The translations under genes were made by a program, and so were the position numbers. Below, piece by piece: positions 16,917 to 31,528 of a stretch of DNA of 34,033 nt. Origin of the DNA: Octopus sinensis (taxonomy: Eukaryota); the NCBI RefSeq assembly GCF_006345805.1, contig NW_021831909.1, positions 1-34,033 of the forward strand, written 5' to 3'. The notes below the pieces were generated by a model, which saw nothing but the letters and a program-made list of their open reading frames with translations, did no database searches and had not been told where the DNA came from. Numbering within the stretch: the first letter of the stretch is position 1; each line of letters opens with the position of its first letter.

Positions 16917-17154
16917 TTACAATTTAAGGTAACTATTAAGGTTATTTTGTGCGGAAGGTTTCGGTGAAACCTCTTCGTTAGTTGTCTCCTCTACAGCACC
17001 ATTGGGTACACGGGTGGATACGGGTAGAGATGAGTTGGATGGAAGCCAGGTATCGTTATCCTGGTAGCTTGATAATGTGGCTTCCCAGACGGCATCGATT
17101 GAAGGGCGTGCGTTGTTCAAATTGCTGATGTCAAGGGTCAGCTTGGTACATTCA
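16917..17154 (-). CDS. DNER: Probable terminal coding exon (phase 2 start): cytoplasmic tail of the DNER-like protein
   Basis: Strong acceptor ttttgtctttctttcatcatttcag|T. GA|T joins to Asp, then [78 protein letters not shown] (TAA ends at 16917). The other two frames hit stops at once, so only the frame matching the upstream phase-2 donor is open. An internal donor and a further exon cannot be excluded. Confidence 0.85.
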
Positions 17155-17342
17155 CTGAAATGATGAAAGAAAGACAAAAATTACATTTCGTTCCAGCATT
17201 TTCTATAAGAATTGATTAAAGATTAAAATTTGCTAAATTTGCTCGTTGAAATGTCACATGACCTCATCAATATTTTGTGAATCACATCGTTTCTAACTGC
17301 TTTATATCCACTCACCTGTTTTCACACCCCACCGTATATGTA

Positions 17343-17765
17343 TACTCTTTTACTCTTTTACTCTTTTACTCTTTTACTTGTTTCAGTCATTTGACTGCGG
17401 CCATGCTGGAGCACCTCCTTTAATCGAGCAACTCGACCCCGGGACTTACTCTTTTGTAAGCCCAGTACTTATTCTATCGGACTCTTTTGCCGAACCGCTA
17501 AGTAACGGGACCATAAACACACCAGCATCGGTTGTCAAGCAATGCTAAGGAACAAACACAGACACACAAACACACACACGTATATATATGCATATATACA
17601 TATATATGACGGGCTTCTTTCAGTTTCCATCTACCAAATCCACTCACAAGGCTTTGGTCGGCCCGAGGCTATAGTAGAAGACACATGCCCAAGGTGCCAC
17701 GCAGTGGTACTGAACCCGGAACCATGTGGTTGGTAGACAAGCTACTTACCACACAGCCACTCCTG
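17343..17765 (-). mobile_element. SINE family B, full length, intronic (sense to the gene)
   Basis: Collinear with 3095-3503. The tail is a tandem 8-mer, (CTCTTTTA)x4 on +. Confidence 0.92.
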
Positions 17766-18019
17766 TATGTATATATATGTATATGTATGTATACACACAA
17801 ATACACAGACATTTACATGTATGTGTAAATTATAGAGCAGTAGAGTAATTAGACAAGGATAGTTATGGCCGGTCTTTGGGGTTAGCCAGGGTTTCACGTC
17901 CATAAAGCGCTTAGGTTTACAGCGTCTCTTGAGACTCTAATGGCTGATGGACTATAAACTTTCCTCAAAGATGAGAGAGAAAAGACATCGTATCAAGCTG
18001 TTGAACACACGGGCAAAGG

Positions 18020-18275
18020 AGAAGGCGTAAAACGTGTGTAGGTAGGATGTTCCTGAGGCTAGTAGATAAGCACTTTACACAATCACATAGGCACAGGCGC
18101 ATATTCAACAGACAGAACCTAAGAATCTTTTTGATAATAGTTCCGAATAGTAAGAGTATTTTAGTTAACACCCCTAGACCACGAGCAGAGCCGAGATGCT
18201 TATATAAAGAACTACAGCAGATGCCTAGTGAGAGGTAAATGCGAAACCAGGGGAGTCGTTTAAGAGGCTGAGGTG
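18020..18275 (+). mobile_element. Decayed Penelope-like element ORF fragment (RT thumb, Cys linker, start of GIY-YIG)
   Basis: Translates to KTCVGRMFLRLVDKHFTQSHRHRRIFNRQNL, then after frameshifts CLVRGKCETRGVV*EAEV. This matches the recalled PLE pattern KTNIGK.FL.LIDKHF....H.LHKIFNRN...CP..GKC....VVY.A.V. Confidence 0.75.
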
Positions 18276-30099: not shown

Positions 30100-30530
30100 C
30101 ACTTTAGACTAAAAGCATTAAAAGATGATTATACCTGCTTGGTTACCTTCTTGATCTGAGAACAGGTAATTTTATGGAGCCTAGATAAAAGAGCTTCTAA
30201 AAGACCCATTTTCATAGAATCAAGGATACCACTACGTCCTGTACGTGGTCTTCATTTGTTTTAGGCTCTCCAAACTTTCTTACCAGTCATAAGACAGACA
30301 AGTACTCTAAATTACTAGAAAATATGCTCTCAAATTCTAATAAGTTTGACTTTAGCCTGAGCCTCAAGGTTCATGACTGCTACAAATATTTAGACTGCCT
30401 TCTAGGTACTTTCATCAATGATGAACAGTAAAGATTTCATCAAGATACAAAAGCAATGGACGAGAGACACCAGAGAAAATATGATATATACAGCATGGCA
30501 AATTACTGCAACGAGATTATTGAGGTAACT
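30100..30530 (+). mobile_element. Decayed DNA-transposon transposase C-terminus, Chapaev/CMC-like
   Basis: Translates to FYGA*IKELLKDPF, then TWSSFVLGSPNFLTSHKTDKYSKLLENMLSNSNKFDFSLSLKVHDCYKYLDCLLGTFINDEQ*RFHQDTKAMDERHQRKYDIYSMANYC. This matches the recalled motif IFDGPQIR.L.KD..F..AW.SF..V..NFLGNHK..NY..LV..ML..F..LGC.MS.KVH.L.SHLD.FP.NLG..S.EQGERFHQD...ME.RYQG.W...MMADYC. The superfamily assignment is from memory. Confidence 0.8.
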
Positions 30531-30713
30531 CTCTCCCTAGAAAGACTTTAAGTGAAGATTTTAGTGATTCAAATAATTTTCTGTTTTATGTTTTCGGTCA
30601 TATGTTTTATGCTATTTGTTTTTCTTTTTAGTTATTATTACCGTAGATTCTTATGCAGTACACTGTAAGCTTTTGTGATGATAAAAATATGTTGATATTT
30701 TAAGAACATCAAA

Positions 30714-30918
30714 TTTTGGCACAAGGCCAGCAATTTCAGAGAAGGGGTAAGACGATTATTTGAATCTCAGTACTCAACAGGTACATATTTTATCGATCCT
30801 GAAAGTATGAATGGCAAAGTCGTCCGCGACGGAATTTGAACCAGAACATTAAGATGAGTGAAATGCCGCTAAGCATTTTGCCTGATGTGCTAACGATTCT
30901 GCCAGCTCTCCACCTTAA
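30714..30918 (-). mobile_element. Degenerate SINE family A copy with tail type iii
   Basis: TTTTGGCACAAGGCCAGCAATTTC...GGAATTTGAACCAGAAC...GCTAACGATTCTGCCAGCTCTCCACCTT. Confidence 0.82.
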
Positions 30919-31393
30919 GTACGTCTAATAAATAAATTCTGTTATATTTGTACCGAAATAGCAACTCGTTCATTAATCAATTAGAGACCTTAAGGCAAAC
31001 TGATTGTGTATTTAGAGCCTGTTCCCAATGTTTCGTTGATGGGATCGACTGGAACTCTTGTGGTCGCAACCGACGTGATGCCACTAACATACAACATATT
31101 TCCTGGCGTTCACGTATCATATATGATAAACATTTTCAGTTTTTCAAACCAGCAGAGTAACACACAGATTACTCAGAATTTATGAAACAAGGGCAAATTT
31201 ACAGTTTAAAAACAAACAGACGTTTAGGGCACATTTATGAAAATACTTTGGACAAGTTAAATAAATATTATAAACAATAAACGGTTAAATAAATACACAA
31301 GAAATAGCGTAACATTAAAGGGAATGTTATTTTGTAATTAATACGATTTTGAATATAATTTCCAACCAATGGTTTTCAATTTGAGTTCCTCAC

Positions 31394-31528
31394 CTGCAAA
31401 TTGGCATCTCGTTCCGACAAAAGTATCGCTGCAAGCACAATGGTAGCCATTTACTCTGTCATGGCAGACGGCTCCGTTCAAACATGGATGCGAAGCACAA
31501 TCGTTAATATTACGATCACAGCGATGTC
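31394..31528 (-). CDS. DNER: Internal coding exon (135 nt, phase 1-1): calcium-binding EGF-like repeat of a DNER-like type I membrane protein
   Basis: Minus strand: acceptor ttttatttctaattccag|GA, donor GCAG|gtgagg. Translates to (G)[44 protein letters not shown], with the six-Cys EGF spacing, the N-I-N-D-C calcium-binding consensus and C-x-C-x4-G-x2-C. Absent from the ORF track because it is short. The symbol is tentative (DNER-like) and rests on recalled similarity of the downstream TM exon. Confidence 0.93.

What the first reader, a model, noticed from the sequence alone, without database searches (positions are those of the whole stretch)
16917..31528. Hidden three-exon C-terminus of a DNER-like EGF receptor in an invertebrate (probably octopus) genome
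Seen in sequence: three minus-strand exons across introns of 4678 and 9347 bp, with GT-AG sites and concordant phases. They give 195 aa of cbEGF, stalk, TM and a 99-aa tail; the EGF exon is not in the ORF track. Recalled knowledge: human DNER reads roughly ...[27 protein letters not shown]...HSLYIIIGALCVAFILMLIILIVGICRISRIEY...SIRHARF...YEDY. This protein has [27 protein letters not shown]...[32 protein letters not shown]...NLNNARP...YQDN. The match runs through the TM and into the tail, not just the generic EGF. DNER is a neuron-enriched, DSL-less EGF protein studied mainly in vertebrates, and its role as a Notch ligand is disputed. Inference: this may be a true lophotrochozoan DNER orthologue, relevant to neural and glial signalling in cephalopods.
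Basis: partly seen in the sequence, partly recalled or inferred. Interest (0 to 1): 0.7.

Follow-up and report, generated by a model that had tools for sequence, protein, structure and literature searches.

The report
Octopod DNER-like gene, last three exons
The window holds the last three coding exons of a cephalopod gene for a single-pass EGF-repeat membrane protein related to vertebrate DNER; they are real and under purifying selection, but automated annotation already names the same gene in a related octopod.

Summary
Minus-strand exons 31528-31394, 26715-26502 and 17154-16917 join through AG/GT sites in one frame. They give one calcium-binding-type EGF, a 26-aa stalk, one TM helix and a 99-aa tail.

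The octopod Argonauta hians has the same three exons: identical lengths (135/214/238 nt), the same splice sites, 80% amino-acid identity, dN/dS 0.07. Its gene model (GAB1605379.1) is already named "DNER, partial".

- Tail similarity to vertebrate DNER is not significant (profile E 0.3; shuffle p 0.13).
- Pfam DNER_C reaches only 20-21 bits against a cut-off of 27.
- The juxtamembrane/TM segment does match in order (hhalign E 1.6e-7; 0 of 100 block shuffles reach it).
- The pre-EGF N-terminal domain of the molluscan relatives, which lies outside the window, matches the same domain of real vertebrate DNER (hhalign E 8e-20; Argonauta vs human, no EGF, E 2e-9).
- No DSL or MNNL domain was found in the six long relatives scanned.

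Strict orthology, expression and function are untested. This is an ordinary member of a known family. The mild new point is that DNER probably predates the protostome-deuterostome split.

The parts
31394..31528 (-). Exon A (135 nt, phase 1 at both ends). It carries the end of the previous EGF (G-H-R-C) and the last EGF repeat.
   Evidence: Same length and boundaries in Argonauta L001 57975-58109. Pfam EGF 24.9 bits, above its cut-off of 21.5.
31404..31499 (-). Six-cysteine EGF core, [32 protein letters not shown]. With the preceding NIND it fits the calcium-binding EGF pattern. It also has an Asx-hydroxylation pattern and an O-glucose consensus (CASHPC), but no O-fucose site.
   Evidence: It is the only EGF pattern in any frame of the window. 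The motif regexes use patterns recalled from PROSITE. Pfam EGF_CA itself scores only 10.7 bits. Best PDB matches are Delta-like 1 and Notch EGF repeats.
26716..31393 (-). Intron 1, 4678 nt, GT...AG.
   Evidence: The Argonauta counterpart is 910 nt. It contains copies of interspersed repeat family 2.
26502..26715 (-). Exon B (214 nt): extracellular stalk, transmembrane helix and membrane-proximal basic tail.
   Evidence: A search of 1.84 billion representative proteins with this exon gave 19 hits; the named ones are all molluscan. Same length in Argonauta.
26564..26638 (-). Transmembrane segment [25 protein letters not shown] (residues 71-95), preceded by the conserved H-x-H motif. G-T-L and C-x-C are invariant in the family.
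   Evidence: Hydropathy. Family alignment A3 invariants Y29, G33, T34, L35, C49, C51. This is the only part that aligns to vertebrate DNER. Pfam DNER_C gives 19.5 bits from exon B alone.
26537..26548 (-). YSKI, a membrane-proximal YxxPhi motif five residues after the CYCR. It is followed by the polybasic stretch [10 protein letters not shown].
   Evidence: The Tyr is nearly invariant, and YxxPhi is present in 8 of 10 family members in A3. A sorting function is an inference.
17155..26501 (-). Intron 2, 9347 nt, GT...AG, phase 2.
   Evidence: The Argonauta counterpart is 3983 nt. It contains two copies of repeat family 1 and long microsatellites.
16917..17154 (-). Exon C (238 nt including TAA at 16919-16917): the distal cytoplasmic tail, ending in YLKL.
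   Evidence: 77% nucleotide identity to Argonauta, ending at the stop codon. No Pfam hit on its own.
17076..17108 (-). [11 protein letters not shown], the tail motif conserved across the molluscan family (consensus RPSxDAIWEAT).
   Evidence: Alignment A3: S90, D92 and E96 are invariant or nearly so. No significant counterpart in vertebrate DNER.

Best explanation
These are the last three coding exons of the cephalopod member of a molluscan gene family that is homologous, and probably orthologous, to vertebrate DNER.

Architecture. Relatives show the whole protein is type I: signal peptide, a roughly 150-aa non-EGF N-terminal domain, about 7-8 EGF repeats, a short stalk, one TM helix and a cytoplasmic tail. 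There is no DSL or MNNL module. The window encodes the membrane-anchoring and intracellular end.

How this end most likely works (inferred, not shown):
- The last calcium-binding-type EGF, with an O-glucose site, ends a rigid EGF rod held about 26 residues above the membrane.
- The conserved H-x-L-Y-I...G-T-L...C-Y-C-R helix anchors the protein. It may mediate lateral association (small-xxx-small GGxxGG) and palmitoylation.
- The membrane-proximal YxxPhi (YSKI) and the basic cluster recruit clathrin adaptors for sorting or endocytosis. This is what is reported for the tyrosine-dependent dendritic targeting of vertebrate DNER.
- The conserved RPSxDAxWEAT motif and the hydrophobic C-terminus dock an unknown cytoplasmic partner.

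Whether the ectodomain signals to Notch is as open here as it is in vertebrates.
For: Shown:
- Exon structure, reading frame and purifying selection.
- The closest relative is Argonauta hians GAB1605379.1, 'DNER, partial'. Other named relatives are from chiton, bivalves and gastropods.
- Relatives carry 2 to 7 separately scored Pfam EGF stretches. The six long relatives scanned have no DSL or MNNL hit; one of them is full-length and one is N-terminally truncated.
- The N-domain is homologous to real vertebrate DNER sequences fetched from the database.
- The TM-region profile match exceeds 100 of 100 composition-preserving shuffles.
- DNER_C is the best Pfam hit for stalk+TM+tail (21.1 bits). 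It did not appear in any of 7 segment-wise shuffles.
- Vertebrate DNER has the same layout: last EGF, then stalk+TM, then distal tail, with phase-1 and phase-2 introns. I deduced this from read-through ORFs such as CEI|R...D|LQWK and IRHAR|[SWF].
- YxxPhi is conserved in 8 of 10 family members.
Against: - Pfam DNER_C never reaches its 27-bit cut-off, in the window protein or in any of the 10 relatives scanned.
- One shuffled control reached 17.4 bits on an unrelated TM family.
- The cytoplasmic tail shows no significant similarity to vertebrate DNER.
- The exon-B search of 1.84 billion proteins returned no hit recognisable as vertebrate DNER at E<=0.001.
- The window itself lacks the upstream exons. 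The N-domain and no-DSL arguments therefore rest on the Argonauta orthologue, whose N-terminus is partial, and on more distant molluscs.
- The second intron is not demonstrably at the same residue as in vertebrates.
- No expression, junction-read or functional data were available.
- Reciprocal best hits and a phylogeny were not done.
Confidence: 0.82

Rival explanations
1. The exons belong to a mollusc-specific EGF-TM family that only shares domains with DNER. It would be a paralogue, or a product of domain shuffling, not the orthologue, and its function could be unrelated to DNER's.
For: - The tail is not alignable with DNER.
- Pfam DNER_C is sub-threshold.
- NCBI names are inconsistent across the family: 'fibropellin-1-like', 'uncharacterized', 'DNER'.
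- The EGF counts recovered in the molluscan relatives are lower than the ten I recall for human DNER.
- No reciprocal search or tree was done.
Against: - Three collinear pieces match DNER in the same order: N-domain, EGF array and juxtamembrane/TM motif.
- The N-domain has no Pfam model and no PDB sequence relative, so it is not a known promiscuous module.
- The C-terminal exon layout and intron phases are the same.
Confidence: 0.13
2. It is the C-terminus of a canonical Delta/Serrate-type Notch ligand, or of a DLK-like protein, whose DSL/MNNL exons lie upstream of the window.
For: The single EGF scores best against Delta-like 1 and Notch repeats in the PDB. The upstream exons are not in the window.
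Against: - EGF similarity is generic.
- The 80%-identical Argonauta protein, the full-length chiton protein and four other long relatives have no DSL or MNNL hit. Where the N-terminus is present, the DNER-type N-domain follows the signal peptide directly.
- Stalk+TM+tail hits only DNER_C and a small TM protein in Pfam.
Confidence: 0.02
3. It is a chance ORF chain or a decaying pseudogene fragment in repeat-rich DNA.
For: The window is 34% GC and saturated with microsatellites that produce many spurious ORFs.
Against: - Omega is 0.07 with dS 1.44 against Argonauta.
- Exon lengths and splice sites are identical, and nucleotide conservation stops at the exon edges.
- There are no frame disruptions.
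Confidence: 0.03

Closest known systems
Vertebrate DNER (delta and Notch-like EGF-related receptor; Pfam DNER_C PF19330)
   Same: - Type I single-pass protein with an EGF array and no DSL.
- Homologous pre-EGF N-domain in the orthologues.
- Juxtamembrane/TM motif H-[NS]-LYI-x-x-G-[TA]-L...CR.
- O-glucose consensus in the last EGF.
- The last EGF, stalk+TM and distal tail sit on three exons with phase-1 and phase-2 introns.
- A tyrosine-based motif in the tail.
   Different: - The cytoplasmic tail is not significantly similar and is longer at its end in cephalopods.
- The YxxPhi sits 5 residues after the membrane here, whereas vertebrates have YEEF about 17 residues in.
- Pfam DNER_C is below its cut-off.
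- The molluscan relatives scanned show fewer EGF repeats and no N-terminal EGF pair ahead of the N-domain (vertebrate features as I recall them).
- The vertebrate tail is nearly invariant (about 95% from fish to human). The molluscan tails vary widely: other family members are 28-44% identical to the window over stalk+TM+tail, and Argonauta is 77%.
Annotated molluscan gene models: Argonauta hians GAB1605379.1, Littorina saxatilis XP_070183220.1 and Dreissena polymorpha XP_052215915.1 (all named 'DNER'); Liolophura sinensis XP_064615154.1 ('fibropellin-1-like')
   Same: Same family. Argonauta is the orthologue, with 80% identity and identical exon structure. All share the stalk motif D-[LVI]-F-x-P, the TM motif, CYCR-x-H-x-x-Y and RPSxDAIWEAT.
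   Different: The names come from automated pipelines and disagree with one another. None has been studied. The cephalopod tails carry an extra ~45 residues ending in YLKL, where other molluscs end in KPKKV, LQV and similar.
Canonical DSL ligands (Delta, Serrate/Jagged) and DLK1/2
   Same: Notch-type EGF repeats and a single TM. The last EGF scores best against DLL1 in the PDB.
   Different: The relatives scanned have no MNNL or DSL. DSL ligands lack the DNER-type N-domain. No TM or tail similarity was detected.

Membership tests
DNER | Type I single-pass membrane protein with tandem Notch-type EGF repeats | tested here: met
   The window has one EGF (Pfam 24.9 bits) and one TM segment. The Argonauta orthologue and other relatives have 2 to 7 separately scored EGF stretches.
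DNER | No DSL or MNNL domain | tested here: met
   No PF01414 or PF07657 hit in the six long relatives scanned: full-length chiton P0002, Argonauta P0001 (N-terminally partial), P0003, P0009, P0014 (N-terminally truncated) and P0015. This cannot be tested on the window's own upstream exons, which lie outside it.
DNER | DNER-specific non-EGF domain immediately before the main EGF array | tested here: met
   Molluscan versus vertebrate profiles: prob 99.2, E 8e-20. Argonauta 83 aa without EGF versus human fragment P0021: 30% identity, gapless over 79 aa, E 2e-9. Chiton: E 3e-8. Tested on the orthologue, not on the window itself.
DNER | DNER_C (PF19330) C-terminal region at Pfam's gathering score | tested here: inconclusive
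   Scores are 20.3-21.1 bits against a cut-off of 27 for the window, and 17-21 bits or nothing for relatives. The profile-profile match is significant only for 36 juxtamembrane/TM columns (E 1.6e-7, 0 of 100 shuffles reach it). Tail only: E 0.3, shuffle p 0.13. The Pfam model is built on near-identical vertebrate tails, so failure is expected for a distant relative.
DNER | Gene structure of the 3' end: last EGF, then stalk+TM, then distal tail, with phase 1 and phase 2 introns | tested here: inconclusive
   The window has phases 1 and 2. Vertebrate phases 1 and 2 are deduced from intron read-through ORFs. The first intron is within one residue of the same position. The second intron's position cannot be equated because the tails do not align.
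DNER | Orthology by reciprocal best hit, phylogeny or synteny | not tested
The forward search with exon B found only molluscan-type proteins.
DNER | Neuron-enriched expression and somatodendritic targeting through tail tyrosine signals | not testable with these tools
   No expression data. A conserved YxxPhi is present.
Delta/Serrate (DSL) ligands | MNNL and DSL domains N-terminal to the EGF repeats | tested here: not met
   Absent from the orthologue and the other relatives scanned.

The most novel reading that the evidence does not exclude
DNER may not be a vertebrate invention. It may be an ancient bilaterian gene whose conserved parts are (i) a pre-EGF beta-sandwich domain with no Pfam model, possibly ephrin/cupredoxin-like, and (ii) the juxtamembrane/TM helix. 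The cytoplasmic tail would have been free to diverge. Cephalopods would then offer an independent large-brained lineage for asking what DNER does, including the disputed Notch-ligand role.
Probability: 0.55. Interest if true: 0.4.

Novelty: new member of a known kind. Interest (0 to 1): 0.25.

Why it matters
For the window itself, little. It is a correctly read gene fragment whose orthologue is already annotated.

The modest value lies elsewhere. The automated 'DNER' label on molluscan models can now be backed by non-EGF evidence: the N-domain and the TM motif. I found no paper that treats DNER outside vertebrates. A conserved N-domain and TM helix combined with a free-running tail show which parts of DNER are likely to carry its ancestral function. 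That is useful for a protein whose ligand role is disputed (PMC5021350).

Tried and rejected
- The word-indexed protein search with the spliced 194 aa gave no hit, so it said nothing about relatives.
I used the contiguous exon B translation instead.
- Exon C alone against Pfam: nothing.
- Tail-only profile comparison and Smith-Waterman with shuffles: not significant. By eye, RP-x12-Y-x-D spacing is shared between the bivalve/chiton tails and the vertebrate tail, but this is post hoc and statistically unsupported.
- Pfam on the N-domain: no family, not even a weak cupredoxin or ephrin hit.
- PDB sequence search with the N-domain profile: only the EGF part hits.
- AlphaFold2 plus Foldseek on the N-domain: the top hit is ephrin-A1, but E is 1.2e-3 and TM 0.38-0.45, so the fold assignment stays a hint.
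- Further upstream exons in 31529-34033: none found.
- N-terminal exons in the 10 kb upstream of the Argonauta model: none found.
- Other coding content in the window: 10 non-repetitive ORFs gave no credible Pfam hit.
- tRNA and Rfam scans: nothing.
- The source organisms of the Logan transcripts P0015 and P0018 (SRR21676476 and SRR21676473) could not be identified.
- Literature on invertebrate DNER: none found.
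Full report
OBSERVATION

I read the three claimed exons on the minus strand and assembled them.
- Exon A is 31528..31394 (135 nt), exon B is 26715..26502 (214 nt) and exon C is 17154..16917 (238 nt, ending in TAA).
- Each is preceded by a pyrimidine-rich tract and AG. 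Exons A and B are followed by GTGAGG and GTACGT.
- The introns are 4678 and 9347 nt, as stated.
- The frame runs through a phase-1 junction (Val, G|TC) and a phase-2 junction (Asp, GA|T).
- The product is 194 complete residues plus one split Gly codon: [194 protein letters not shown].
- A six-frame pattern scan finds only this one EGF in the window.
- The EGF exon is missing from an ORF list at 80 aa. At 20 aa it shows only as a 47-aa fragment.

IS IT REAL?

I searched 1.84 billion representative proteins with the contiguous exon B translation. This gave 19 hits.
- I fetched its genomic locus, L001, and mapped its exons.
- The last three Argonauta exons are 57975-58109, 59020-59233 and 63217-63454. 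Their lengths, 135, 214 and 238 nt, match the window exactly, with AG and GT at the same places. The introns are 910 and 3983 nt.
- Protein identity is 155/193 (80.3%). dN is 0.103, dS is 1.44 and omega is 0.07.
- Between the two loci, blastn conserves only the three exons and short cores of interspersed repeats. Similarity stops within a few bases of the splice sites and at the stop codon.

So the exons are genuine, under strong purifying selection, and spliced the same way in a second species' gene model. The high dS shows the window is not Argonauta hians but a fairly distant relative. "Octopus" is plausible, but these tools cannot prove it. No other exon of this gene lies in the window.

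WHAT FAMILY IS IT?

Pfam on the 194 aa gives EGF at 24.9 bits. DNER_C (PF19330) scores only 20.3 bits against a cut-off of 27.
- On stalk+TM+tail, DNER_C scores 21.1 bits. Exon B alone accounts for 19.5 bits, over profile positions 4-37 (the TM region). Exon C alone hits nothing.
- Seven segment-wise shuffles never hit DNER_C. One did reach 17.4 bits on an unrelated TM family.
- By itself this is a weak lead.

The other named hits of the exon B search are molluscan: chiton Liolophura ("fibropellin-1-like"), Solemya, Lottia, Littorina ("DNER"), Dreissena ("DNER") and Argopecten. There are also unnamed Logan transcripts.
- None of the 10 scanned reaches the DNER_C cut-off.
- The six long ones have no DSL or MNNL domain and carry 2 to 7 separately scored EGF stretches.
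- The full-length chiton protein shows the architecture: signal peptide, a roughly 150-aa non-EGF domain, EGF repeats, stalk, TM and tail.

To test the DNER link on real sequences, I used recalled human DNER segments only as bait. The database returned vertebrate DNER fragments that were 100% identical to the bait over its full length. These are P0021 for the pre-EGF region and P0062 for the C-terminus, plus turtle, frog, lizard, bird, gecko and fish sequences.

Three comparisons followed.

1. N-domain.
- The molluscan alignment A1 against the vertebrate alignment A2 gives hhalign probability 99.2% and E 8e-20 over 130 columns.
- Chiton against human by BLASTP gives E 1e-17.
- With all EGF sequence removed, the Argonauta 83-aa segment aligns to human DNER without gaps at 30% identity (E 2e-9). 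The chiton segment gives E 3e-8.
- The shared motifs are [FW]-x-V-T-x-x-G-F-x-x-C, L-x-L-G-x-N-[YH]-F-I and L-R-L-x-[IV]-x-V-K-x-x-x-C.
- The domain has no Pfam model and no PDB sequence relative.

2. Stalk+TM+tail.
- Alignment A3 (10 molluscan-type sequences including the window) against A4 (vertebrate) gives probability 93.9% and E 1.6e-7. This covers only 36 columns, from two residues before H-[NS]-L-Y-I through the helix to C-R.
- TM segments inflate such scores, so I shuffled the A4 columns within the pre-TM, TM and post-TM blocks 100 times. The null score has mean 18.0, sd 4.2 and max 32.5, against 46.5 observed. The reversed alignment scores 17.1.
- The match is therefore order-specific.

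3. Tail only.
- hhalign gives E 0.3.
- Smith-Waterman of each tail against the human tail, with 1000 shuffles each, gives p = 0.13 for the window. The best of ten is p = 0.027, uncorrected.

GENE STRUCTURE IN VERTEBRATES

Several database fragments are ORFs that read through introns.
- "CEI|RKWAHQ...SES|DLQWK" and "...PYLD|LQWK" place a phase-1 intron three residues after the last EGF cysteine. The His codon C|AY reads as CGT (Arg) at the donor and as GAY (Asp) at the acceptor.
- "IRHAR" followed by S, W or F variants places a phase-2 intron in the tail.

The window has the same three-exon layout and the same phases.
- The first intron is one residue off: four residues after the last cysteine.
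- The second cannot be equated with the vertebrate one, because the tails do not align.
- Phase-1 introns flanking EGF modules are common in general, so this agreement is supportive but not decisive.

HOW THIS END OF THE PROTEIN PROBABLY WORKS

Shown from the sequence:
- The EGF fits the calcium-binding and Asx-hydroxylation patterns and carries the C-x-S-x-P-C O-glucose consensus. The patterns are as I recall them from PROSITE and the Notch glycosylation literature.
- There is one hydrophobic helix.
- Invariant in the family: D-x-F-x-P in the stalk, Y-I-x-x-G-T-L in the helix, and C-x-C at the cytoplasmic face. The R after C-x-C, the following Tyr, and S-x-D-x-x-x-E in the tail are nearly invariant.
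- YxxPhi is present at that Tyr in 8 of 10 members (YSKI in the window).

Inferred:
- The Cys pair may be palmitoylated.
- The GGxxGG face may support helix packing.
- The YxxPhi and the polybasic stretch recruit AP complexes for sorting or endocytosis. From memory, vertebrate DNER is reported to depend on tyrosine signals and endocytosis for dendritic targeting (Eiraku 2002; Kurisu 2010). Only the Kurisu title was seen here.
- The RPSxDAxWEAT motif and the hydrophobic C-terminus bind an unknown partner.
- Whether the ectodomain acts on Notch is disputed even in vertebrates (PMC5021350).

RIVALS

- A Delta/Serrate or DLK reading is close to excluded by the absence of DSL and MNNL in the orthologue and relatives.
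- A chance ORF chain or pseudogene is excluded by omega 0.07 and the conserved splice sites.
- The serious rival is that the molluscan family is a DNER paralogue or a domain-sharing relative rather than the orthologue. I could not run reciprocal searches or a tree.
- The collinear match of N-domain, EGF array and TM motif, together with the apparent uniqueness of the N-domain, makes orthology the more likely reading.

NOVELTY

Automated annotation already calls the Argonauta, Littorina and Dreissena genes DNER. Finding this gene in the window is therefore not new. I found no paper on DNER in molluscs, cephalopods or lophotrochozoans. The non-EGF evidence for deep homology is a small addition. 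Overall this is an ordinary, correctly interpreted gene fragment.

SIDE RESULT

An AlphaFold2 model of the human N-domain, using the mixed alignment A5, is a beta-sandwich of moderate confidence (pLDDT 68.9, pTM 0.61).
- Its best PDB fold match is ephrin-A1 (3hei_B, E 1.2e-3, TM 0.38/0.45).
- Another ephrin-A1 chain (3mbw_B), the ephrin receptor chain of a Cedar virus G complex (6p7y_B), a plastocyanin (3cvb_A) and the cupredoxin domains of nitrous oxide reductase appear further down the list.
- No match reaches E <= 0.001.

This hints at an ephrin/cupredoxin-like fold. It is not a finding.

Noticed in passing
Not in the window: Argonauta P0001 residues 1-83, human DNER fragment P0021 residues ~38-160, alignment A5: The pre-EGF domain of DNER is conserved from molluscs to human. 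It has no Pfam model and no PDB sequence relative. An AlphaFold2 model is a beta-sandwich whose top Foldseek hit is ephrin-A1, but the match is weak (E 1.2e-3, TM 0.38-0.45). It may be an ephrin/cupredoxin-like ligand-binding domain.
   Followed up: partly
window 3100-3505, 17365-17772, 21541-21965 (all + strand): Three copies (74-91% identical) of a ~400-nt interspersed repeat with an internal (CA)n/(TA)n tract. Two of them lie in intron 2. A 49-77 nt core is 83-96% identical to two sites in the Argonauta locus, L001 50288-50342 and 57450-57530. Read on the minus strand, the end looks like a tRNA-derived SINE head by eye, but ARAGORN and Rfam find nothing.
   Followed up: partly
window 27955-28186, 32947-33178, 26830-26977 (+); 9083-9320 and 4139-4309 (inverted): A second interspersed repeat family of ~240 nt, 82-94% identical between copies. 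One copy ends about 115 nt upstream of the exon B acceptor. It also matches Argonauta L001 35321-35430. No coding potential was found.
   Followed up: no
window-wide, e.g. 13050-13900, 23540-24200, 27000-27330, 12500-12800: The DNA is 34% GC and is saturated with long microsatellites and minisatellites: (ATGT)n, (GGAAGGAA)n, (CTAT/CTGT)n, (TAA/ATT)n and (TA)n. These create most of the long spurious ORFs in the ORF list.
   Followed up: no
L002 (SRR21676476) and L003 (SRR21676473), proteins P0015 and P0018: Two transcript-derived family members from unidentified organisms have the family's TM motif. Their tail end (D/E-F-S-D-S-x-x-A-P-L-I) resembles the vertebrate DNER end (D-Y-S-P-D-D-K-P-L-V) more than the molluscan tails do. 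P0018 gave the best, though still weak, tail score (p 0.027). They may bridge the two groups. The organisms could not be identified.
   Followed up: partly
window 16628 (also 15956 and 15675), minus strand: The first AATAAA lies 289 nt downstream of the stop codon and is a possible poly(A) signal. The 3' UTR is not conserved with Argonauta.
   Followed up: no
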